Assembly (NCBI RefSeq): GCF_016432865.1
Contig: NC_067400.1
Coordinates: 616,652,149 to 616,716,000 of the forward strand
Source of the DNA: Antechinus flavipes
Lineage: Eukaryota
Length of the DNA stretch: 63,852 nt
Direction of reading: 5' to 3'
The translations under genes and the position numbers were made by a program. This document shows positions 1 to 63,852 of this stretch, one piece after another (position 1 is the stretch's first letter; every line of letters starts with the position of its first letter). The notes under the pieces were generated by a model. It was not told the origin of the DNA. It was given only the letters and a program-made list of their open reading frames with translations, and searched no databases.

Positions 1-205
1 ACACACAGACTCTCACACATACACACACATACACACACACAGACTCTCACACACACAGACTCTCACACACACACACTCACACATACACACTCACACACAC
101 ACAGATTCTCACACACACACACAGACTCTCACACATACACACACACTGACTCTCACACACACATACACACTCACACATACACACACACTCACACACACAC
201 AGACT

Positions 206-242
<37 letters not shown>
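1..242. repeat. Compound (CA)n / CACACT / CACAGACTCT microsatellite in DMPK intron 4 (left end truncated by window)
   Basis: Visible directly as interrupted AC dinucleotide runs; explains the CV-rich ORF 77..328(-). Confidence 0.95.
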
Positions 243-246
<4 letters not shown>

Positions 247-344
247 CTTTCCCATCCCCCAGCGTCTCTCTTGGTCTCTGCATCAAGCGGAGCGGTGGAG
301 GGGAGCTTTCATAGTCAGTGACTCTCAAACCTCCCTCCCCCTAG

Positions 345-4966
<4,622 letters not shown>

Positions 4967-5412
4967 GCCCTAGATTTGTCCCCGATGAACCCAGGTGTCC
5001 TGGGAGGGGAAGCCGTGGTCCGAGTGCGCAATCCGTTTGCGCCTCCCCTGGACTCAGCGTCCGGCCCCATCCCCGTGATCCGGACCCGTCTCCGGGGGCT
5101 CCGGCGGTGTCAGGAGAGGGAATCAAGGGGGGGAGGGGGACGCGGCCCGTGCTGGGCTGCCCCTCCCACAACAAACACTGGCCCTCACTTCAGGGACCCC
5201 ACGCCAACACGCACCACGCGCCACGCGCGCCCGGGGCCCCCTCCGCCTCCCTCACAGCTCGCTGCCCGGCTTGATATTTATTGAAACCCACTCCCCAACT
5301 GCACCAGCCGGAAGCCGGGGGTCCCCGAGGGGCAGTGGCTGAGCTGTCCCGTGTCCGCCCCCCTTCTCTATTTATGCACTGAGATCCCGATCCCTGGTAT
5401 TTATTGTCGCCT

Positions 5413-5418
5413 AATAAA
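5413..5418 (+). terminator. DMPK polyadenylation signal AATAAA
   Basis: AATAAA preceded by GGTATTTATTGTC (5396-5408) and ATGCACTGAGA (from 5374), like the recalled human DMPK 3' end. Confidence 0.85.
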
Positions 5419-6087
5419 AGCCTCTTGGTCTCCTCGGCGCAGGCCTGGTCCTTACACTCCACCCCCACCTCCCGCCCCATCCTAGGCCGGGTCCGACCGA
5501 GCAATGAGGGAGAGGGGAGGGAAGTCCCCTCTAAGGGGTCCAGACCAGCGCTACGGCTCTTCCAAGTGGAGATTCGCTCCAGAACGGCGGGCTTCAGAGG
5601 CTCGGAGAGCAAAGGGTTAAGGGCGGGAGCAGCTCCACGCAGGCGCCGCGGAGCTCCTAAGTTAGAGAAAACTTTCTTCCCCCAAGTTTTTCCTAGGTTG
5701 GAAAGGAGCGAGGGAGGCGGGGCCCGTGACGAACCACGGGCGGGAGAGGGCGGGACTAGGGTCCCAAGGAAGAAGCTGACCAGGCCCAGAGCCCCGCCCT
5801 GCCCTCCCCGCTCGGGGAAGAGGGGTGCAGGAGCAGTGTCCCAGACTCGGCGAGACCACGCGGGGAAGCCCGACGGGGAGGGCTCCGGGGGGACGCCCCC
5901 CGGGAGGAGGGGTGCCCAGGGGAGGGGGCGGTGTCGCGGGCGGAAGGAGGTGCCCCGGAGGGGGAAGGGCAGGGGAGGCGGGGCCCCGGCTGGGCCGGGC
6001 TGGGGGAGAGGGCTGGAAGAGGAGGGGGTCGGGGGGAAGTCCGAGGGAGGGAAGGAAAGGGGGAGGAACTTCCCAAAGTTGCAAAAC

Positions 6088-9000
6088 ATGGCTACCTTCC
6101 GTGCAGAGCCGAGCGCGGGCCCGGCGGGTGGCGGGGAGGCTGCGGCTACGGCCGGGGCTGAGGACGAGGAGGAAGAGGAGGAGGAGGAGGAGGAAGAAGA
6201 GGGGGAGACGGAGGCGGACGAGCAGACGGCGCGGCGGCTCCTGCAAACCCTGCAGGCGGCCGAGGGCGAGGCGGCGGCGGCCGCGGAGGGCGCGGGGGCC
6301 CCTCTGGAGCCGCCGCCCCCCGCTACGGCCGCGCCGGCTCCGGGCCCCGGCGGCGCCCCCGGCGGTGGGCTGCGCTTCTCGGCCGAGCAGGTGTCGTGCG
6401 TGTGCGAGGCCCTGCTGCAGGCGGGCCACGCGGGCCGCCTGGGCCGCTTCCTGGGCGCGCTGCCGCCCGCCGAGTGCCTACGTGGCGGCAGCGACGCGCT
6501 GCTGCGCGCCCAGGCGCTCGTGGCCTTCCAGCGCGGAGACTTCGCCGAGCTGTACCGGCTGCTGGAGAGCCGGCCCTTCCCCGCGGCGCACCACGCCTTC
6601 CTGCAGGACCTCTACCTGCGCGCCCGCTACCGCGAGGCCGAGCGCGCCCGGGGCCGCGCGCTGGGCGCCGTGGACAAGTACCGACTGCGCAAGAAGTTCC
6701 CGCTGCCCAAGACCATCTGGGACGGCGAGGAGACGGTGTACTGCTTCAAGGAGCGCTCGCGGGCCGCGCTCAAGGCCTGCTACCGGGGCAACCGCTACCC
6801 CGCGCCCGACGAGAAGCGCCGCCTCGCCGCGCTCACCGGCCTCTCGCTCACGCAGGTCAGCAACTGGTTCAAGAACCGACGCCAGCGCGATCGGACGGGC
6901 GGCCCGGGCCCCGGCGGGAGCGGGAGCGGGAGCGGGGCGGCGGCAGCAGCAGCAGCGGCGCCCGGCAGGAGGTGAGCGCCCCGGGGGCTGCCTTGAGCTC
7001 GCGCCCCCCCTCCTCCTAAGCAGTCGGACACACCCTCTCCTCCTACTCCCCCCCAGCACCAGACTGCTGCAGCTCCTCCTAAAGCCCCCTTTTTTCCCGG
7101 GATTGCTGCAGCCCCGCCCCCCAGCTGGGCACGCCCCCTCCTCCTGAGGGTCTCATCTCCTGGATTGCTGCAGCCCCCTGAAGGCTGGACACGCCCCCTC
7201 CCCTAATGCCCCTTAACACCAGACTGCTGCAGCTTCTAAAGCCCCATTTTTTCCTGGGATTGCTGCAGCCCTCCCCCCCCAGACTGGGCACGCCCCCTTA
7301 GCGCCCCCTACTACAGCTCCTCTTCAAACCCACTTAGTTCCTGGAATTGCTGCAGCTGACCCCCCCAAGACGATAGGCCCCTCCTCCCCTTAGCCCCTGG
7401 GATTGCTCCTCCCCGCTGGGCCCGGCCCCTTCGAGCCCCCCTTTAATGGCAGCCTGCTGCAGCCCCCCGCTCTGCGGGCTCTCTTTGCTGCCTGGGACCC
7501 TGGGGGGGGAGGGGGGAGGGATTGCAGGAAGAAGGGGCTGGGCTGGCCACATGCTGGAGCCTGGCTTTTTGTTGTGAAATGTGACCCCTCCTCGCCTGTA
7601 AGCCGAGCCTCTGCCCTCCCACCCCAGTGCACGTGGAGTCCCCCGCTGGGCTTCCTCCTGGGGAGCCGAGTTCCGGCTCCTCCCTGCCGCACCCCTGCCC
7701 CCCTGCAGTCCGGCTGAGAAGGTGGGGGGTGGGTTCAGAGAGCGCGCTTTGGGCACTTGGAGCAGCCTCCCCTCCGCCGTTAGTGACCGGACCCGCCTCC
7801 GGCTAAGTCCCCAGAAAGCTCAGCTTCCCCGTCTCTTTTCTCTGGGCAGTGAGTCGGACGGGAACCCCAGCACAGAAGACGAGTCCAGCCACGGAGCCGA
7901 GGACCTGGACGCGGGGGCGGCCCCGGGGGGCGCGGAGGTGCCGGCTCCTGGTTCCGTGTTCCTGGCGGGGCCGGCGGCTCCTTCGGGTCCCCCGGGCACG
8001 GCCCCCATCCTGCTCAATGGCAGCTTCCTGACGGCGGCCAGCTCCCCGGCTGTGCTGCTCAACGGGGGCTCCGTCATCATTAACGGGCTGGCTCTGGGGG
8101 AGGCCCCCGGCCTGGCCCCGCTCCTGCTCACGGGGGCTGCTGGAGGTGGGGGGCCTGCCCCCTCCAGCCCCCAGCCCCCCGCTGCACTCCCCTCCCTGCT
8201 CCAAGTTCCCCAGTCTGGCGACCTGAAGGCTGAAGATGCCCAGCCTGGAGAGGGGGGCTCCAAAGGGAACCAGGCATCTGGGGAGGAAGCCCCTCCCCTC
8301 CAGGGGCTGTCCCTCTCCCAAGTGGTCCCGGGCCCGCAGCCAGCGGCCCCCTTCCCTCCTGCCGTGGTGACCTCTGCGGGGCCCGGGCCCCAGGTGGTCC
8401 CACTGTCACCCCCAGGCCAAGTGGCCCCCATGCCAGCCCCCCAGGTGGTCCCACTCTCTCCATCAGGCCCCGTCTACCCCGGGGCCTCCCCCTTGGTCTC
8501 CCTTCCCCAAGTGGTGCCCACCTCCCAGGTGGTGACTCTGCCCCAAGGCGTGGGGTCCCTCCAGCTGCTGACTGGGCCCACCAGCCCCGTCAAGGTGGCG
8601 GCAGCCACAGGGGCCGCCCTGGGCCAGGCCAACGTTCACCTCATCAACCCGGGAATGGGGGTCGCAGCCTTGCAGTTGCCCACGGCCGCCCCAGGTAAAC
8701 ATGCTGACCCTTTCCCGGGCCCCAGGCTGGCAGCCAGCGGAGCCCCCAGATACCTCCCGAAAGGCCCGTTGCCACTTGCAGACTCCCGCCCCAGACCCTG
8801 TGCTCTGAGGAGGGGATGGGCTGGGGCGGTCACCCCCCTTTCTCCAGGCTCTGGGTTCCGCAGCCCCTTTTTCCTTCCCGCGGCTCACACGAGCTGCTTC
8901 TAGCCAGAAGGCACATACGGGACCCCGCCTTCCTGTGGTGCCCTCCTAATTCTGGGCCCGTGGCGGCCCCACACTGACCGGGCCAAGGCCCGCGTCCCCC

Positions 9001-10771: not shown

Positions 10772-13700
10772 TCACACAGACTCCAGGCTGTCAGGGAGGG
10801 GGTCCCCCAGGGGGGATCCCATGCAGGCCAGGCCTGGGCAGCACAGGGCCTTCTCGGCCAGCAGCAAGTGGAATGGCTTAGGGGACAAACGGTCGTCCTC
10901 CTCGCTGGAACAGTCCTGCCGGACAATCCGGTTGTGCTGGCGGCTGAACTTCCGGGCCTTGATGCTGGGGGACGGGTCACCAGCGGGGAGGGGGGTGAGA
11001 GGCAGAAGGGAGGTGTGGCCACAGCGGGGAGTCAGCCCCCCAAAAAACTTCCCAGGGCACCCCAGCCTGGCCAGTCCCTTGGGGGCTTTCACTGTGACCT
11101 GGGCATCAGGGCTTTGGGACTTGGAGCTCAAGGGGGCACTAAGCCCAGAGGGTCCCTGTCCCCTCAGCTGCCAGTCCCGCCCACCCCGCCCTCCCTCTTA
11201 CCAGTAGGGCCTCCTCTCCTGCTTGGTCATCACCCGCCACAAGTGTGCCAGCTCTTTGGTGGCCGCGGTGGATGCAGTGCCAGGGCAGGCTCTGCCAGAG
11301 GAAGAGGAGGATGGGGTGAGAACAGAGAAGCAGCTGGGCCAGGTGCAGGGGGCTCTGCCTGGGTCCACTTGGGGAAGACCCCTTTTAGGGCTGTTTTCCC
11401 ACTTGACTTTCCCTGTTCTAAGGTCCCTCTTGGCTCTGATGTCCCCTATGTAGGCCCTTCTCAGCCCTGACATCTCCTGTGGGGCCTCTTGGCCCTGACG
11501 TCCCCTGTTCTAAGGCTCTTCCTGGCTCTGACCTTCGGGGTCTGAAGGTTTAAGGGTCTCCCTCACTCTGAGGCTGTACAGCTGGCCAGACTCTCCAGTA
11601 TCCCCTCCTCTATAAAAGCCCTGAGGAGGGGGAGGGACTCGGGGGCCTTCGCCCCAACCACCCGTTCCGCCGGGCCCGGAGTCTCCCCTTGGGTCCTTGC
11701 GCAGTGTATGATGCCTACAAGTCGGGCAGGAATAGCCCCTCAGAGGGGCAGCCGGGAGCTGGTGTCCACCATTCGTTGACCTCGGCCAGGTCACTTCATG
11801 GAGGCCGGTCCCTAGCCAGACGGCCCGGGGCGGCCGGCCTTCGGCGAGCAGAGAGCGGGCTCGGCCCCGCGGGAGGGCTGGGTCGGGGCGCCCGAGGGGC
11901 CGCGCCACGCACCCACCGGATGTACTGCTTGCGGTTGAGCCGGCAGAACATGATGAAGCCGTTGACGCACTTCTTCTTCAGCTGGAAAGGGCAGTGCGCC
12001 TTCTTGCTCTCCTTGTGCCTCCCGGAGCCGCTGCTGCTGCTGCTGCTGCCGCTGGCGCGGCTCCGCTTCCGCTTCCTCCCGAAGGTGGGCAGGGGCGAGG
12101 CCCGCTTGGTGGGGGTCCAGGTGCAGTCGCTGTCCTCGTCGCTGGAGGACAGGAAGCCGTCTGGGGTGGGCTGGGAGGCCTGGGGCGGGGGCAAAGGGCT
12201 TAGTCCGGACCCTGCCTGCCCAGTGCCCAGCAGCGGGCGCCTCCGAGGTGATCTCGCCTGGGGCGGGAACCTGGACTCAGGGAGCGCACGGCCTCTGAGA
12301 AGTGGAGGGGTCACTGGGCGGGGAGGGGGAGGCCGTGTGCCAAGGCCCATCCCCCTCGGAAATGAGGGACTGTGGGCTGCTCTCGAGGCCCTCCCGGCTT
12401 TCCCGTTCGGAGACACAGGGAACTCCTTGGCGCCCCCAGAGAGCTGCCCCCCAAATCTCTGCCTGCCTCATCGGTAAAACGGGGCACCCCTCTCCCCTCC
12501 CAGGGTGGCTGTCGGGCTGCCGTGGGCCTGGCCCAGAGGAGGGCCTCTATCAAGGGGAGCTCCCGCTCTCACACAGGCTGACTTTTCAGGCCCCTTGCCA
12601 GCCCCTCCAGCCAGCTCCAGGTGGCCAAGCCCCCTCGAACAGGACACCGAGTGTCGGGGGGCTTCCCACACTCGATCTCACCTCCTGCCGTCTGTTCCAC
12701 AGGGACACGAGCTCGGTCACCCCGGAGCTGGGGCTGGAGTCAGTCTTGCTGGTCTCGCTCAGGGAGAGGTAGCAGTGGTCAAGGGAGAACGCCGACTGGA
12801 AGAGGTCGAGGGAGTGGGGAGGGCCCGCAGGGGCCGAGGGGGCTGGGTCCTGGGCAGGAGAGAGGGAGCGGAATGGCGGCCAGCCTCCCAGCCCCGGCCT
12901 CCTGCTCTGCGGCGGCAGCCGGCCCCCTGGGGCCGCACCCATTTGTTCTGGGCCCCCCGGGACTCCCCAGCCCGGACTGCTTGACCTTGGGGCTCCGGCT
13001 TCTCCCCAAACCGTAAGGGGGGGAGTGGGGCTGGGGCTGGGCGGTTTTACACGACCAGGAGGCCATTGGGAAGCGAAGGAAGGGGATGGAGCAGGGAGAG
13101 GCTTCCGAGCCCGCTACCTTCTTCTGCGGGGTGCCGGCCAGGCTGTCCAAGCAAGCGGAGGACTGCGGGCTCAGGCACACGTCTTCAAAGAGAGCTGTGA
13201 GTAGAGAGAGGCAGGGGTCAGGAAGCCCCCCGAAGGCCTCCTGGCCCCCAGCCCGCAGCATCGGTACTGGGACGTCACCTTGGGTAAGGCTCTCGGCGCC
13301 CTCCTGAAGCAGCTTCCCGGGCAGCAGTCGGCCCGGAGAGGTGAAGAGTGAGGGGCTGAGACCGAGCTCCTCGCCAGGTCGGCCAGCTCCAGGCCAGCTC
13401 CTCGTCCTGGGAGAATCCACCAAGGGGCTCCCTGGAAAGCAGACCGGCAAGCTGAGCCACAGATGCGCCCTGACACCGACAGACTTTTCCATGAACCCCA
13501 AGGTCGGTGGAACCCCAAGAAGGATGACAGGTGCCCAGAAAAAACCCCTCCTGCCCTAAGAGTTTTCAGTTCAGCCTTGACTCGAGAATGATGAAAAAGG
13601 GCCTTGCCCTCTCTCGGCCCTCAGTGAGGGGTCAGATCAGGGGGTTTCCCAAGTGCCACCATCCTTGATCTCCTCCATATACCCTGAGGCCCCTGCCAGC

Positions 13701-44419: not shown

Positions 44420-46312
44420 ATGGACCCCAGCAGCCTCTCTCCAGTCCAGCTGTGGTGCCCTCGGCCCTTCGGTACCTACTCTCAGAATCAGCCCCGCTCA
44501 GCCACCCCCACGGCCCGCAAGCCGCCCCCTCCCCCTGCCTGCCCCGAGCCTGGGAACGGTAGCAGTCTGGGCCCCGCCGATGGGCTGGTCCGATCAGAGA
44601 ATACACCTCCGGCCCCAACGGCCCCCGCTCCCCCCCTGCTTTCCACGGCCCCCGGGGAGGAGGGCCGCGTCCTGCTGGACACCTGGTACGTCATCAAGCC
44701 GGGCAACACCAAGGAGAAGGTGGCCTTTTTTGTGGCCCACCAGTGTGGGGGCGGAGCCAGCCGGGCCAGTGCAGGCAAAGTCAAGGGCCACTGGGGCAGT
44801 GACAGTTCCAAGGCCAAACGGAGGCGGCGCTGCCTCGATTCCACCAAACCTCGGCCCAGCGCTGGGAAACCGCCTGATGTGGTCGGAGAGGAGGACCAGC
44901 AGCTGGCTGCCCCTGCCGAGGCAGCCGCCGGCGCCCCAGAGGACGTGGACCTGCTCTCTGTGGCGGAGATGGTGGCCCTGGTGGAGCAGAGGGCCGCTCT
45001 GGCCCTGCAGAGCTACCCCCGAGCGGGTGCCCCCACCCCTGTGGTATTCGTGTCGGCCGCCGAGCAGGGCGCGCAGGGCCCCGGCGGGGAGCGGCGGCCC
45101 GGCAGCGACTGCAGCCGCGTGGCCGAGGCCGTGGCCCACTTTGAGGCCCGGCGGGATGGGCCGCGTAAGGAGGAGGTGCGCCCGGGGGACGCCGGTCGCA
45201 ACGGAGGCCCCGGAGAAGTGCGCATCGCCTTTCGAATCTCCAGCGGCCGCGAGTCCCGCTCCCCCGAAGGCGGCCAACCGGGGGCGGGTTCCGGCGGCCG
45301 GCCGGGGTGCACTTACGCGGGAGGGCCGGGCCCCAGCAGCCGGGCTCAGGACAAGATCACCTGTGACTTGTACCAGCTCATCAGCCCGTCCCGGGACGCC
45401 CTCCCCAGCAATGTGGACTTCCTGCTGGCCCGGGCGGATGAGGCTGGGGACGGGGAGGCTGCCGGAGCCGGCCGCCCCGAGGGGCCTCCCGAGCGAGCAG
45501 CTGCGGGGGACAAACCCCCCGCCCCTCCCCCACCCCCCGCGGGCGCCCGGGAGTGCGGGGGAGCCGGCGCGGCCGGCTTCCACGTGGACGTGGTGGTCAC
45601 GGGCGTGGTGGACGAGTGCGTGTTCTTCGGCAAGGACGGCGCCAAGACGGTGAAAGAGGAGACGGTGTGTCTGACCGTCAGCCCGGAGGAGCCGCCGCCC
45701 CCGGGCCAGCTCTTCCTGCTGCCGGCCCGAGGGGAGCCGGCGCCCGAGGCGCCCGCCGCCCCGGAGGCTCCGGCGGCCCCCACGCCCGAGGGCAGCGAGT
45801 CCGAGGCGGCCGCCGCCGCCCCTGACGCCTCCCTGTGCCGCCTCTACCACCACGTGTCCCACGACTTCCTGGAGATCCGCTTCAAGATCCAGCGCCTGCT
45901 GGAGCCCCGCCAGTACATGCTGCTGCTGCCCGACCACGTCCTGGTGAAGATCTTCGGCTACCTGCCCACGCGCGCCCTGGCCGCGCTCAAGTGCACCTGC
46001 CACTACTTCAAGTGCGTCATCGAGACGTTCGGCGTGCAGGCCACGGACTCCCGCTGGAGCCGCCACCCGCTCTACCGGGACGACCCCTGCAAGCAGTGCC
46101 GCAAGTGCTACGAGAAGGGCGACGTGTCGCTGTGCCGCTGGCACCCCAAGCCCTACCACCACGACCTGCCCTACGGCCGCTCCTACTGGATGTGCTGCCG
46201 CCGGCCCGACAAGGACACGCCGGGCTGCAGGCTGGGCCTGCACGACAACAACTGGGTGCTGCCCTGCCACACGTTGGCGGGCTCCCGGCCCGGCCGGGAG
46301 GACGCCAGGTGA
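44420..46312 (+). CDS. FBXO46: F-box only protein 46, 630 aa, single coding exon
   Basis: Acceptor after 44347. Motifs LCPRPF-like start, RVLLDTWYVIKPGNTKEKVAFFVAHQCG, DLLSVAEMVALVEQR, F-box LLLPDHVLVKIFGYLP, Cys-rich C-terminus. Confidence 0.97.
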   Translation: MDPSSLSPVQLWCPRPFGTYSQNQPRSATPTARKPPPPPACPEPGNGSSLGPADGLVRSENTPPAPTAPAPPLLSTAPGEEGRVLLDTWYVIKPGNTKEKVAFFVAHQCGGGASRASAGKVKGHWGSDSSKAKRRRRCLDSTKPRPSAGKPPDVVGEEDQQLAAPAEAAAGAPEDVDLLSVAEMVALVEQRAALALQSYPRAGAPTPVVFVSAAEQGAQGPGGERRPGSDCSRVAEAVAHFEARRDGPRKEEVRPGDAGRNGGPGEVRIAFRISSGRESRSPEGGQPGAGSGGRPGCTYAGGPGPSSRAQDKITCDLYQLISPSRDALPSNVDFLLARADEAGDGEAAGAGRPEGPPERAAAGDKPPAPPPPPAGARECGGAGAAGFHVDVVVTGVVDECVFFGKDGAKTVKEETVCLTVSPEEPPPPGQLFLLPARGEPAPEAPAAPEAPAAPTPEGSESEAAAAAPDASLCRLYHHVSHDFLEIRFKIQRLLEPRQYMLLLPDHVLVKIFGYLPTRALAALKCTCHYFKCVIETFGVQATDSRWSRHPLYRDDPCKQCRKCYEKGDVSLCRWHPKPYHHDLPYGRSYWMCCRRPDKDTPGCRLGLHDNNWVLPCHTLAGSRPGREDAR

Positions 46313-47938
46313 AGGGGGGGGAGGGGGAGGGAGCGCCCACCCCCCCCCTCCCAGCCCCTCCCCGACTTCTTTTTGGCTTGCCCTGCTCAACACAAACTAA
46401 AAACTCATCGCGGCCGATCAAACTGGGAATGGAAGAGCCTACCCGAGTGCCCATTGGCTCTTTGTCACTTAAGCTCCACCCCGTCAACTCGAGGTCTTTC
46501 TCCGGCCCCTGAGGGTGTTTTGGGGCCCGGGAATGGAGTGGGGCGTCTCAGAATAATGTGTTGTCTTCATCTCAGCCCCTCCCAGCCCCCTCTCCTTCTC
46601 TGATCTGGACTCCCCAGACGGGGATGATGCTGGGGTGGGAGCCAGGGGCCTGTCCCCTTATCAGTCTCTCCCCACAAGGGCCCTACCAGCAGAGAGTAGC
46701 CTGAGGCTTGGTCCACGCCCCCTCACCCACATCTGTCTATCTCCTCCGGTCCTCATTGTCATTTCTCAGGCCTTTTTCTCTCGATTCTCCTGTCCCTGGT
46801 CCCCTAGACTGCTTGTTACCGTCACTGTCCCTCATGTCGGCTCTACTGGACCTCTAGCTCCTCCCAACCTCCCCAGCGATGTTTCTCTCCAGTCCCTGGA
46901 AGAGACATTAGCACCATTCTCTCCCAGATCTGTCTCATCCATAATCTTTCCCTTGCCTCTTCCTAGGATAGGGAAGAGGGGAAAAAAGTTCTTTTTGAAA
47001 GATTTGAATCCATTTACCCCTCACCACACAATTTAAAGCAAGCCCCAATCCCAAAGCTGTGAATCCTTTCTGAGAGTGGTGGGTACCCTGAATTGGAATT
47101 TTGGGGTTTCCCATTTCTACTCAGAGGAAACTCTGGGGGGCTCTGGTCCTCTCTTTGCTTCCTTGGCTCCCAGAAGAAAAAAAAAAAAAACAGACTCCTG
47201 GGTTTCCTGGGGAAGCCGGGAATCCAATCTGGGACATTCTCAATTTTTTTTGTTTTGTTTCGTGGTGGGTTTTTTTGTTTGTTTGTTTGTTTTTACATCT
47301 TTGTGGTTCTGAATGCTTCTCATGTGTGGCAGTTTGGCCGGTTTGGGAATCGGCCCTTTCTATAAAGCAACTATTTATAAGCCTGGGTCTGGGCTATTCT
47401 GTGTTCAGGGAGTGGGAGGGGGGAGGTGGCCAGAGGCCCACTTTGGCTTGGGAAGATTAACGACAATAACCCACATTTTAACAAACAGAGTCTTAGAATG
47501 TGGAGCTCCAAAGCTTCTATTTCAGATATCTTTTGGTAGAGCTTTTAGTATCCCAGACTAGGAAAATCTCGGAGGCCTCGTCAGGTGTGTCCTCTCCATC
47601 ACAGGGATAGAATCCTGCATTCTGCATGGAGAGATAACAGGGCCGTGGCGCGGGGTCCGGATAATTCCAGGCTTTAACCGCCCAGGCCATCTGCTGCCAA
47701 ACCTAGCTCTTTCCCTTACACAATGGGCCCTGAATTACTGAGTGCATCGGGGACTTTCAGTGATTTATTCATATATGTCCTGAGCACGTGCTGGAGAAAT
47801 GACCTCTGTGCTGGGTTCTGGAGGATAGACTGTGCGGATAAGACACATGTTTGCCCTGGTACTCACAGGCTAGGCCCTGGAGGTAAGATGCCCAAACTGA
47901 TAACTATGTGTCAAAGATTTATTAGAAAGGTATAGACT

Positions 47939-48152
47939 GGGGCAGCTAGGTCAGAAAGGCTCACTTTTCTGAGTGAAAAATCTACTCAGACACATCCTAG
48001 TTGTGCATCCCTGGGCAAGTCACCTCACTCTGTTTGCCTCAGTTTCCTCATGTGTAAAATGAGCTGGAGAAGGAAATAACAAACCACTACCAAGTGCCAA
48101 GATAACCCCAGATGGGATCACAGAGTGGGACGCAACTTAAAAGTCTGAACAA
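47939..48152 (+). mobile_element. MAR1-like CORE-SINE
   Basis: GCCTCAGTTTCCTCATGTGTAAAATGAGCTGGAGAAGGAAAT...TGCCAAGATAACCCCA. Confidence 0.75.
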
Positions 48153-48814
48153 ATTGGATGGCTGTGTACAATCAGCAGATATTTGCTTCAGAGCTGGGAG
48201 GGACCTTGGGAAGGCTTCTGGTCCTTGAGAAGACTTCTGGTCCACTGTCCTTCACTTTACAGATGAGGCTCCCAAGGCTCAGGCCTCAGGAGCAACATTA
48301 GCATTATGGCAGAGCAGAAGGCACTGGACTGAAATTTGAGGTACCTGGCCTCTTCCGCTCAATTCTCCTACATCCCTGTGGGCGAAGAGTACTGACTCTA
48401 TGCCCAAGTTTCTTGTTTCTAACATGAGGGGATTTGAAGGTACCTTTTTGTTTCAAATTCTGCCATCTGTGACTTGTCCAAGGTCATAGAGATGATAAGG
48501 GAGCAGGGCTGAAACTGGAAGGAAGGTCCTTTGACCTTACCATCCTGTGCTGGCACTCCCCAAGGGAAGGTCATTGGTCAGCTAGTGGGATCCGGGAAAA
48601 CTGCACAGAGAACCAGGGATAATTATATAGCATTTGAAGGTAGTGGGGGCTTTACATGAACGGTTCTGACCCTCACAACACCACATGGAATTAGGGGCTA
48701 CAGCTATCTGTTTAAAAAAAAAAAAGAATGGGCTCCAATTAAGATACTTTTCCACGGGCATATTACTAACAAGTATTAAAGACAGGATTGAATTATTCGA
48801 AGAAAAAATAGACA

Positions 48815-48990
48815 GCATAGAATACTAGGCTTGGAATTAAGACACATCTTCATGAGTTCAAATATGACCTCCAGACACTGATTCTGGGTGAATCACGTCA
48901 CCCTGTTTTTCCAGTTTCCTCATCTGTAAAATGAATTGGAGAAGGAAATGGCAAACCATTCCAGTATCTCTGCCAAGAAAACCCCAAATG
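48815..48990 (+). mobile_element. MAR1-like CORE-SINE
   Basis: CATCTGTAAAATGAATTGGAGAAGGAAATGGCAAACCATTCCAGTATCTCTGCCAAGAAAACCCC. Confidence 0.75.
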
Positions 48991-51174
48991 GGGTCACAAA
49001 AAGTCAGCCATTTTCTAATTTCTAAGAGCCTCCCTCCCAAGTTCAAACAACTAACATTTAGGTTCTAAGAAAGTTCCAAATCCTGAACCCAACAGATATG
49101 ACTCATTGCTCTTTGATGATGATATGTCAGTCAGTACTGTGGCTAGATTTTCTATCCCTATCTCTGTAAAAGATCTGAGGTTTTATTGGCCTGCATTTGT
49201 CATCCAAGTCAGCCAACCAAAACAGCAATTACTGGGCACCTACTCTGTCCAGCTTGTTGATGGACACTGGAGATAGAGACATAAATTGCAAGCCTCTGCA
49301 TTCAAGGAGTTTACATGCTATTAGGGGATGACTACATACATAAAACTAAATATAAAATATTGCTATAACTTTAGAATAGAAGGGCTAAGTCCGTCATAAA
49401 CATTACCTGTAATAGCCAACATCTATATAGTGTTTAAAGATGTGCAAAGTCATCTACAAATATCTTATTTGATCCTCATCAGAATCTCAAGGGGTAGATG
49501 CTGCTATTATCCACTTTGTTTCAATGATAAAGCTGAAGTCAAGGAATATTAAGGGATTTGCCGGGTTCCAACAGCTGCCCTCAGAAGCAGAATTCAAACT
49601 TCAGTTTTCCTGACCACAAATTCGACCTGTCCGGAAGCCCCCTAGCTGCCTCTAAATCCCCAAATAAATACAAGGTAATTGCAAGGGAAGCAGGGGAGGC
49701 AAATAGCAAAGAGAGGTTGGACGATCAGGAAAGTTCTCATGTAGGAAGTGGCATTTGAACTGAGTTTTGAAGGAATTGGCAATTCTAAGATGTGAGGGTG
49801 AGAAGAGAGGTATTTTAAGAGGTATTTTATCTTATTGCAAAGATAAGGAAGTATGAAACTCTTCAAGGCCAGTTTAAAGGGAAATTTTACATATTTTAGA
49901 TATACACAGAGATGTGTGTGTGTGTGTATATATATATACACACATGTGTGATTATATGTATATACACACACACTCAAACTATATATGACTGAATAGATAT
50001 CAGTGGTGTGATTAGTAGCCGAAAACCCCCCAAGAGTTCTTTGTGTCCCTCTGGGTGAGGCCTTGAGCCTCCTAATGACCCTCAGACAACTCCAGATTTC
50101 TAGTTGCAGAGCAGATGCCATTAAGCTTAGAAGAGGCAGTTCTCATGAGGAATTCACCTTATCAGTGAAATCACAAAATTGTTTTTAGGAGAGCGGTGTC
50201 CTGCTGTACTTTTGGCCAAACCTCAATTTGTCCTCTCGCTGCAATGGAAGGCACATTTTAGGAAAAGCAGAGGAAAGAACACAGGCTGTAGTCAGAGAAC
50301 CTGAATTCAGATCTCAATTCTGATGTTTTCTGCCCGAGTGACAGCCCTGGGGGGCCTGTTTCCTTTATAAAATGGAGTTTAACTAGAAAGCCTCTGGGGT
50401 CCTTTCCACCTTCAGATCCAGGGCCCTGATGGTGCAGAACAGTCAAGGGTCGAGTTAACATGCTGTCTTCTGAGGATAAGCTGAGGATTAGTGGGATGTC
50501 TCGCCCTCTCCAGGCACTTAAGAGTCATCTTAATCCCTGGAAGGCTCTTGACAAGACGAAGCATCAACTGAGAACGGACCAAACGCTTATTTTTATAGAC
50601 TTGCCTGTGGTCACAACACGGGACAGAGGCCCGATCTCAGGCCACATCCTCCTCTTCTCATCTGGTGCTCTTTCCGCAGTAACACGCTGCTTTACGTTTG
50701 CATAAACGCTCGCAGCAGCGGGTCCCGGCGGACAGAGAATTACCGAAGTGGGGAAGACCCGAGTTCGAGCCCATCCTCTGCCACTTACTGGCAGAGCCAC
50801 AGGGTGAGTCCCTTAACCTGTCTGCCTCAGTTTCCCAGTCTGTACGATGAGAATCCCAGCACCGCTTCCCGGGGTGGTTGTGAGGATCCAAAGAGATCAC
50901 ACCTGAGGCACGAATCCGCAGGCCTTCCAGCTCGCGGGAGTGACGACAGTCTGCCCAGAGGGCAGAAGTAGCTTGGGTTTAGCGCCGCCCCAGACCCCAG
51001 CGGGCTCGGCTGGGACTCCCCTACATTGCGGGTCTCGGACCCGAGGCGAGACGTCCAACCTTGGGATGCACTGGAAGAGATCTGCTGGAAGAGACGTCCT
51101 CGGATGCTTTTCTCTGGACCTTAGGAGGTCACTGGCCCGCGGAGACTAGGCGACTTGCGACTCCCATTAGAGCA

Positions 51175-51572
51175 ATTGGGAACAACCCAGACTTGTGCCA
51201 GACTACCGCCAGTTAAAGGAGAGCGCGTCTTTGTCTCCTCCAATCAGGACTCCTCAAGTTCGGGAGGCGTGCTCTTCGTAGAACCAATCAGAGTCACACC
51301 CTATGGGGGAGTGTCCAATAGTCCACAGGTAGGACCCGGGGGGTGGTAAGTAATGAGTCCCCTTGACGACTTGAATAGGCGTGGCTTCCCGGGAGCCAAT
51401 CCTCCTCGTGCCTCCGAAGGAGGCTGAAGGGGGCGTGTTCCCGCGTACGACGTCGGTGCCTCCCATTGGTCGCGGTCTCCGACTGCATTGGCGGGTTATT
51501 TCCGGAGGGGCGTGTCGTGGCGGGCACATTCGGCTTCCCGGGCCGCACAGGGTGCTCCGCAGGTCCGGGGCC
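51175..51572. promoter_or_regulatory. QPCTL CpG-island promoter with seven CCAAT boxes in both orientations
   Basis: CCAAT at 51240, 51284, 51315, 51396; ATTGG at 51175, 51465, 51487. Confidence 0.8.
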
Positions 51573-62838
<11,266 letters not shown>

Positions 62839-63049
62839 CCCTTGGACAACCCCAGAACCAGGCCAGTTCTGGGCTCCCGCCCTCGCGGGGCCCCAGAGCA
62901 CACGGACTGTCCCTTCCAGACAGTGGGGGGCAGGAACAGCCGGACTGTGACTCTCAGGGACTGATTACTCAAACGTGCTACTGTGAGAAAAACCTTCCTT
63001 TTTGTATTCTGGCTTCATTCGTTCGGTCTTAGGGGCCTGCCCTCGGCGA

Positions 63050-63450
63050 GCCGCCATTTATTGAGCACCTACTGGGTACCTGGCTCTGGGCTAGAGACTG
63101 GGGATACAAGGATGGGAAAAGAAAGCCCCTCACCTTCGTTGCAGGATACACACTTGTAAACAGATAAGTAAATCCCAGGTCATTTGCAGCCCTCAGAGAA
63201 GGAAAAGCAATCGTTCACAAGGCAGATGGAGTTACAGCTCTCAGGGTACCCCACTTAGAGGCATGAAGCCCCGAGTTCAAATCCTGACTCACACACTTTC
63301 TCTTGGTGTGACTCTGGGAGTCATTGGACTTGTCTGGGTCTCAGTTTCCTCATCTGTAAAGTGGGGATAATAACACTCTCACGTTCCACCCCCACCTCGT
63401 GGTTGTGGGGATCTTAGGAGGTGACCTTGGTACAAATGTGGAGTGCTGTG
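63050..63450. mobile_element. L2 3' fragment and MIR downstream of QPCTL
   Basis: ATTTATTGAGCACCTACT; TCTCAGTTTCCTCATCTGTAAAGTGGGGATAATAA. Confidence 0.65.
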
Positions 63451-63852
63451 TAAGCGCAGCAGGCTGATTGTTCCCGTTAGCCAGTCTGCGTGTGCCCGGG
63501 GCTCAGAACTGGCACTCGGGATCTAGATCGTCTGGATGCTCAGCCAGCTGTGATCTTTGATCCCCATCACGCCCATCTGACATCTGGGAAAAGCCTGGCT
63601 CGGGGGATTTGACTATGAACAGTATCCGCGTCCTCACTCACAGAACTGTCTGAGAGTTTCTCTCAGGAGCCTCTAAGGGAATCAGCCAGTTCCCGTTCCC
63701 AGGGGTCTCCTGCCCTGCTTGGGGCACAGCTGGGCATCCCTGGCAGCCATCAAGCCTGGCTGAGCCCATTTCCCTAAGGTGAAGCCCAGCATCCCCTCCA
63801 GATCAGGATTCACTGTGGGCAGGGGAGGAGAGGGCAGTCTTTACCTGGCACC

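What the first reader, a model, noticed from the sequence alone, without database searches (positions are those of the whole stretch)
44420..62838. QPCTL is flipped relative to the human/mouse locus and SNRPD2 is not at its 5' end
Seen: FBXO46 and QPCTL are both on + (tandem), and I found no Sm D2 coding sequence (MSLLNKPK.../HCNMVLEN...) on either strand. Recalled: in human and mouse FBXO46 and QPCTL are convergent, and QPCTL is head-to-head with SNRPD2. DMPK, SIX5, MEIOSIN and FBXO46 keep the expected relative orientations. Inference: a local inversion separates marsupial and eutherian arrangements, with one breakpoint between ~47.5 kb and ~51.2 kb, which would break or predate a bidirectional promoter pair.
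Basis: partly seen in the sequence, partly recalled or inferred. Interest (0 to 1): 0.7.

Follow-up and report, generated by a model that had tools for sequence, protein, structure and literature searches.

The report
QPCTL flipped beside FBXO46 in marsupial
In this marsupial genome the enzyme gene QPCTL points the opposite way from its human counterpart, so it no longer sits head-to-head with the splicing gene SNRPD2; this is a real but ordinary one-gene flip, and I could not tell which lineage made it.

Summary
The window carries DMPK(+), SIX5(+), a MEIOSIN-like HMG exon(-), FBXO46(+, 44420-46312) and an intact seven-exon QPCTL(+, 51573-62838). No Sm D2 coding sequence is found in any of the six frames.

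FBXO46 is 94.6% identical to brushtail possum and 90% to opossum, so the animal is an Australasian marsupial. Two papers state that human QPCTL and SNRPD2 share a bidirectional promoter, so QPCTL is flipped here relative to human.

The wider reading was not tested:
- The tool that fetches the locus from other species was closed, so it is unknown whether the flip is marsupial-wide or which lineage inverted.

Against a misassembly: the window has no N, no flanking inverted repeat and no leftover QPCTL exons.

The breakpoint on the FBXO46 side probably lies at about 48.8-51.2 kb. The other breakpoint lies beyond the window.

The scan had already noted the same flip from the adjoining window of this genome (s1-204760). 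It places the SNRPD2 promoter about 1.7 kb or more past the window end (s1-204815); I did not verify that.

Verdict: a real, modest lineage-specific micro-inversion, a new example of a known kind.

The parts
345..1292 (+). DMPK kinase-domain exons (inside ORF pieces 345-557 and 831-1292)
   Evidence: Pkinase profile positions 74-122 then 154-212, ascending on +
5404..6975 (+). SIX5 exon 1 (ORF span)
   Evidence: SIX1_SD 8.4e-39 and Homeodomain 1.3e-12
11796..12416 (-). MEIOSIN-like HMG-box exon (ORF span)
   Evidence: No Pfam hit. Atlas rank 2 cluster 'meiosis initiator protein', score 0.86, and all ten best hits carry HMG_box. A lead only.
44420..46312 (+). FBXO46 coding sequence, single exon, 630 codons plus stop
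46313..48800 (+). Probable FBXO46 3'UTR. The first poly(A) signals on + are ATTAAA at 48775 and AATAAA at 49663.
   Evidence: inference only, no RNA data. Places 48027-48065 lie inside this span and were not sent as a query to any search tool.
48800..51200 (.). Spacer that should hold the FBXO46-side inversion breakpoint
   Evidence: Lies between the first FBXO46 poly(A) signal and the QPCTL promoter. No gene, no Sm D2 sequence, no Rfam family.
50700..50900 (+). MIR/MAR1-like SINE just upstream of the QPCTL CpG island
   Evidence: Read directly from the sequence; my own recognition of the SINE core
50950..52000 (+). QPCTL promoter CpG island, TATA-less. CCAAT boxes at 51240, 51284, 51315, 51396 and ATTGG at 51465, 51487.
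   Evidence: CpG observed/expected 0.65-1.02. Densest CCAAT/ATTGG cluster of the window: 6 in 320 bp against 0.45 expected.
51573..51878 (+). QPCTL exon 1 coding part (102 codons, with a hydrophobic membrane-anchor stretch)
60205..60354 (+). QPCTL exon 2
60781..61062 (+). QPCTL exon 3
   Evidence: Peptidase_M28 4.8e-12; solved QPCTL 7.4e-32
61236..61388 (+). QPCTL exon 4
62301..62400 (+). QPCTL exon 5
62484..62600 (+). QPCTL exon 6
62690..62838 (+). QPCTL exon 7 with stop codon
   Evidence: Peptidase_M28 1.5e-05; solved QPCTL 5.4e-23, aligned to its very C-terminus
62839..63852 (+). QPCTL 3' flank: no poly(A) signal on +, no CpG island, no Sm D2 sequence, two SINEs. The 3'UTR runs off the window.

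Best explanation
This is a genuine one-gene inversion difference between this Australasian marsupial and eutherian mammals.

The block DMPK-SIX5-MEIOSIN-FBXO46 has the eutherian layout. QPCTL, about 11.3 kb from start to stop codon plus its promoter and 3'UTR, reads away from FBXO46 instead of towards it.

One breakpoint lies in the spacer between the FBXO46 3'UTR and the QPCTL promoter, at about 48.8-51.2 kb. The other lies between the QPCTL 3' end and SNRPD2, beyond the window.

As a result QPCTL is driven by its own CCAAT-rich, TATA-less CpG island about 2.4 kb downstream of the likely FBXO46 poly(A) site. It does not share an island with SNRPD2.

Shown here: gene identities, strands, the intact QPCTL, absence of SNRPD2 coding sequence in the window, and the human head-to-head arrangement from two papers.

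Inferred: that the assembly is right, where the breakpoints lie, and that SNRPD2 follows on +.

Not decided: polarity. I lean slightly (about 55:45) to the tandem layout being older. Splitting a promoter a few hundred bp wide without harming an essential gene needs a very small target, whereas an inversion with breakpoints in two kb-sized spacers brings two intact promoters together.
For: Strands and identities. Marsupial origin. Human SNRPD2/QPCTL bidirectional promoter: (10.1101/2021.04.14.439685; 10.1101/2024.07.09.602608). No Sm D2 sequence in six frames. No N in the window. No inverted repeat flanking QPCTL. No second copy or leftover QPCTL exons. Sampled 31-mers of 46300-52200 are held by runs of organism A (0.88) and of three further organisms (B 0.59, C 0.58, D 0.27). 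Leads not verified here: SNRPD2 promoter downstream of QPCTL. The genome is said to be Antechinus flavipes, whose published assembly has a contig N50 of 51.8 Mb from about 100x PacBio. If so, orientation inside a gap-free 64 kb comes from long reads rather than from Hi-C scaffolding.
Against: The k-mer shares show presence, not contiguity, and the best holder may be the assembled individual itself. No other marsupial, monotreme or sauropsid locus could be read, so the flip could be private to this species or genus. Human FBXO46/QPCTL strands and the whole mouse layout are recalled, not tool results. The second breakpoint and SNRPD2 itself are outside the window.
Confidence: 0.75

Rival explanations
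1. Assembly artefact: the QPCTL segment was placed in the wrong orientation, and the animal really has the eutherian head-to-head layout.
For: No read-level check was possible. The best run may be the assembled sample. If the assembly is the published one, it was built from noisy PacBio reads with wtdbg2.
Against: The 63,852 bases contain no N, so no scaffold join exists at the FBXO46-side junction. No long inverted repeat flanks QPCTL; the only pair is 74 nt at 72%, with one arm inside an intron. An adjoining-window reading independently places the SNRPD2 promoter after the QPCTL 3' end (unchecked).
Confidence: 0.08
2. Not a simple inversion: QPCTL was duplicated in inverted orientation, or transposed, and the original copy was then lost, giving the same end state.
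For: The end state alone cannot separate the two routes. The neighbourhood seems prone to rearrangement: an ibis gene model joins GIPR to FBXO46 on one strand.
Against: tblastn of each QPCTL exon against the rest of the window finds only the exon itself, so there are no pseudo-exon remnants. An inversion needs fewer events.
Confidence: 0.07
3. The flip is real but young and narrow, arising in Antechinus or dasyurids only, so it says nothing about marsupials versus eutherians.
For: Only this genome was read. The runs holding most 31-mers are this species and close relatives.
Against: No evidence either way. There are no fresh breakpoint signatures, but the second breakpoint is outside the window.
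Confidence: 0.3

Closest known systems
Human SNRPD2/QPCTL bidirectional promoter pair at 19q13.32
   Same: Same two orthologous genes in the same neighbourhood (GIPR-SNRPD2-QPCTL-FBXO46-SIX5-DMPK). QPCTL has a CpG-island, TATA-less promoter in both.
   Different: In human the two genes are head-to-head on one accessible promoter. Here QPCTL is tandem with FBXO46 and there is no Sm D2 coding sequence in the 5.2 kb upstream of it or anywhere else in the window.
Bidirectional promoters made or unmade by lineage-specific inversions, such as the cow-specific partner of CYB5R4 at a 43-Mb inversion breakpoint (PMC2688522)
   Same: A rearrangement breakpoint changes what lies opposite a promoter.
   Different: That case is a 43-Mb inversion creating a new non-coding partner. 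This one is a single-gene flip of about 15-20 kb involving two conserved protein-coding genes.
CDK20/GATA1 block in the same genome
   Same: The same genome also differs from eutherians by a local inversion at that locus; there the marsupial order was judged ancestral.
   Different: Different chromosome and genes. It is an AI note that I did not check.

Membership tests
QPCTL (isoQC, Golgi glutaminyl cyclase) orthologue | Glutaminyl cyclase / Peptidase_M28 fold | tested here: met
   Exon 3 scores 4.8e-12 and exon 7 scores 1.5e-05 to PF04389, at profile positions 1-53 and 153-190
QPCTL (isoQC, Golgi glutaminyl cyclase) orthologue | Closer to QPCTL than to the secreted paralogue QPCT | tested here: met
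   111.9 vs 87 bits for exon 3 and 82.4 vs 53.4 bits for exon 7 against solved structures
QPCTL (isoQC, Golgi glutaminyl cyclase) orthologue | Intact multi-exon gene with an N-terminal membrane anchor | tested here: met
   Seven exons, all GT-AG, 1254 nt in frame. Exon 1 has a hydrophobic stretch, [16 protein letters not shown]. Its anchor function is inferred.
FBXO46 orthologue | F-box plus full-length similarity to annotated FBXO46 | tested here: met
   F-box-like 2.1e-07; 90-94.6% identity over the full length to marsupial FBXO46
Head-to-head (bidirectional-promoter) gene pair SNRPD2/QPCTL | Partner gene on the opposite strand with its start within about 1 kb of the QPCTL start | tested here: not met
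   No Sm D2 motif or Sm1/Sm2 signature in six frames of the whole window. A non-coding SNRPD2 first exon could not be tested without a reference sequence.
Evolutionary micro-inversion | Same orthologous genes in the same order, one segment reversed relative to another lineage | tested here: met
   Window strands. Human head-to-head pair from papers. Human FBXO46 strand relative to QPCTL is from my own recall.
Evolutionary micro-inversion | Both breakpoints located | not testable with these tools
   The first is bounded to about 48.8-51.2 kb. The second is outside the window (searches are leads only).
Evolutionary micro-inversion | Orientation confirmed by reads independent of the assembly | not testable with these tools
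One search shows only k-mer presence.
Evolutionary micro-inversion | Distribution across species and polarity from outgroups | not testable with these tools
No paper found.

The most novel reading that the evidence does not exclude
The tandem layout FBXO46>QPCTL>SNRPD2 seen here is the ancestral therian (or amniote) state. On this reading, the SNRPD2/QPCTL bidirectional promoter of human and mouse was created in the eutherian stem by a single-gene inversion that brought two independent CpG-island promoters together. That would be a dated example of a bidirectional promoter born by micro-inversion.
Probability: 0.4. Interest if true: 0.5.

Novelty: new member of a known kind. Interest (0 to 1): 0.3.

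Why it matters
Bidirectional promoters are usually treated as old and stable. A conserved housekeeping/enzyme pair that is head-to-head in eutherians but tandem in a marsupial gives a natural experiment. It could show whether QPCTL and SNRPD2 need a shared promoter for their expression, and how such pairs arise or break.

The locus also matters medically: it lies in the DM1/GIPR GWAS region, and QPCTL is a CD47-pathway drug target. Knowing which regulatory couplings are lineage-specific could help in reading non-coding variants there.

On present evidence this is a small structural difference, probably visible in any annotated marsupial genome, and not a new kind of biology.

Tried and rejected
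1. Cross-species synteny. I found FBXO46 orthologues in opossum, a rodent, echidna, turtle, lizard, birds and amphibians.

   - After that, no letters of 48027-48065 were sent as a query to any database, pattern, paper or findings search.
   - The Rfam scan began at 48066 and the local tblastn left those places out.
   - TRF and local regex and composition scripts did run over window spans that include them.

3. Literature. No paper links QPCTL with marsupials, synteny or head-to-head conservation. The supplements of PMC2688522 do not list the pair.

4. Hidden SNRPD2. Rejected.

5. Second or decayed QPCTL copy. Rejected.

6. Known RNA families in 48066-63852: none.

7. Steps left out on purpose.
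   - The QPCTL exons were not joined into one protein. Exons were searched apart by reference, so full-length QPCTL relatives were not searched.
   - No metagenome scan was run, because host contigs long enough for synteny are unlikely and any eutherian-like contig could be human.
   - Cluster P0002 (Logan, 544 members, possibly human) was not compared or looked up.

Full report
**What is in the window**

The 63,852 bases contain no N.

- At the left end, protein-kinase exons ascend on the + strand: Pkinase profile positions 74-122 at 345-557 and 154-212 at 831-1292. This is the 3' part of DMPK.
- SIX5 exon 1 (SIX1_SD 8.4e-39, homeodomain 1.3e-12) is on + at 5404-6975.
- A minus-strand ORF at 11796-12416 has no Pfam hit. 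Its nearest named Atlas clusters are all HMG-box, and the second is 'meiosis initiator protein' at 0.86. This fits MEIOSIN on -, but only as a lead.
- FBXO46 is a single 630-codon ORF on + at 44420-46312 with an F-box.

**QPCTL**

- Exon 3 and exon 7 match Peptidase_M28 at profile positions 1-53 and 153-190, in that order on +.
- Both score clearly higher against solved QPCTL than against QPCT: 111.9 vs 87 bits and 82.4 vs 53.4 bits. Exon 7 aligns to the very C-terminus.
- Reading the borders gives seven exons with canonical GT-AG introns: 51573-51878, 60205-60354, 60781-61062, 61236-61388, 62301-62400, 62484-62600 and 62690-62838. Together they make 1254 coding bases, or 418 codons, in one frame.
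- tblastn of each exon against the rest of the window finds only the exon itself. There is one copy and no decayed remnants.

**SNRPD2**

Eight Sm D2 peptide motifs, allowing one or two substitutions, gave no credible hit in six frames. Generic Sm1 and Sm2 signature patterns gave none at all. Sm D2 is almost invariant in vertebrates, so I take its coding exons to be absent from the window. A non-coding first exon could not be tested.

**Which animal**

- The FBXO46 protein is not in the protein collection.
- It is 94.6% identical to brushtail possum, 93.5% to wombat, about 90% to the two opossums, and 57-65% to rodent, echidna, turtle and lizard. It is therefore an Australasian marsupial.
I did not verify that. 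It agrees with the seven sequence pieces the scan index reports and the 2n = 14 assembly of that species.

**Comparison with eutherians**

- Two papers state that human QPCTL and SNRPD2 share a bidirectional promoter. One names the locus order GIPR-SNRPD2-FBXO46-SIX5.
- From my own recall of the human annotation, SNRPD2, FBXO46, SIX5 and DMPK are on one strand, and QPCTL, GIPR and MEIOSIN on the other. Mouse has the mirror image.
- In window orientation the eutherian layout would be FBXO46(+) QPCTL(-) SNRPD2(+). The window shows FBXO46(+) QPCTL(+).

**Where the breakpoint lies**

- On +, no AATAAA or ATTAAA occurs between the FBXO46 stop and 48775 (ATTAAA); the next is AATAAA at 49663. The FBXO46 3'UTR probably runs to about 48.8 kb.
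- The QPCTL CpG island spans about 50.95-52.0 kb, with a MIR/MAR1-like SINE just upstream at 50.70-50.90 kb.
- The island is TATA-less. It holds four CCAAT and two ATTGG boxes within 320 bp, the densest such cluster in the window: 6 against 0.45 expected, Poisson 8e-6 per 320-bp window. From general knowledge, CCAAT/NF-Y boxes are common in bidirectional promoters. This architecture fits a promoter that once was, or could become, bidirectional, but it does not prove either.
- After the QPCTL stop there is no poly(A) signal, no CpG island and no Sm D2 sequence up to the window end. The 3'UTR and the second breakpoint are outside the window.
- Earlier first-stage notes place an AATAAA-rich minisatellite and then the SNRPD2 promoter about 1.2-1.7 kb past the window end. 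If that is right, SNRPD2 is on + and only QPCTL is flipped. These are unchecked AI notes.

**Is it an assembly error?**

I could not test this with reads.

- The look-up of sequencing runs showed that sampled 31-mers of 46300-52200 are held at 0.88 and 0.70 by two runs of one organism. Runs of three other organisms hold 0.54-0.59, 0.58 and 0.27.
- This shows presence, not contiguity, and the best holder may be the assembled animal.
After that I worked beside those places.
- Against an artefact: there is no gap in the window. No sizeable inverted repeat flanks QPCTL. If the species note is right, the assembly has a contig N50 of 51.8 Mb from about 100x PacBio, so orientation here was set by long reads and not by Hi-C.
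- I put a misorientation at about 8%.

**What could not be done**

- Paper searches gave nothing on this pair outside human.
- Hence three things remain open: whether the flip is shared by all marsupials, whether it is ancestral or derived, and the exact second breakpoint.
- My slight lean to 'tandem is older' is an argument from target size only. Separating two starts a few hundred bp apart without damaging an essential snRNP gene is harder than joining two intact promoters through breaks in kb-sized spacers.

**A side observation**

An annotated ibis 'FBXO46 isoform' of 1016 residues (P0008) splices the last transmembrane helices of GIPR onto the FBXO46 coding exon. Its best solved match is GIPR at 176 bits, against glucagon receptor at 162 bits. 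That would put GIPR upstream of FBXO46 on the same strand in that bird, unlike human. It hints that this neighbourhood was rearranged more than once in amniotes, but it rests on one automatic gene model.

**Verdict**

- It is a new example of a well-known kind of event, of modest interest unless outgroups show that it dates the birth of the eutherian bidirectional promoter.
- The scan had already noted the same flip from the adjoining window of the same genome (s1-204760).

Noticed in passing
P0008 (protein; not in the window): An annotated ibis (Theristicus caerulescens) 'FBXO46 isoform' joins GIPR transmembrane helices 4-7 (residues 240-391; best solved match GIPR) to the FBXO46 coding exon. 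This implies GIPR lies upstream of FBXO46 on the same strand in that assembly, unlike human.
   Followed up: partly
window 51240-51491: Four CCAAT and two ATTGG boxes within 320 bp just upstream of the QPCTL start codon. This is the densest cluster in the 64-kb window (6 against 0.45 expected), in a TATA-less CpG island.
   Followed up: partly
window 50700-50900; 63040-63420: MIR/MAR1-like SINE copies directly upstream of the QPCTL CpG island and in the QPCTL 3' flank.
   Followed up: no
window 62839-63852: No AATAAA or ATTAAA on + after the QPCTL stop, so the 3'UTR exceeds 1 kb and runs off the window.
   Followed up: partly
window 58675-59244 (-): A 189-codon ORF with LINE-1 ORF2-like sequence inside QPCTL intron 1, which spans about 8.3 kb.
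   Followed up: no
window 1-320: A long CA/TG-rich microsatellite (reads as THTHTH... in translation) inside a DMPK intron at the window start.
   Followed up: no
window 47986-48059 and 61777-61850: The only inverted repeat in 46-63.85 kb (74 nt, 72% complementary). The other arm lies in a QPCTL intron, so the pair does not flank the inverted gene.
   Followed up: no
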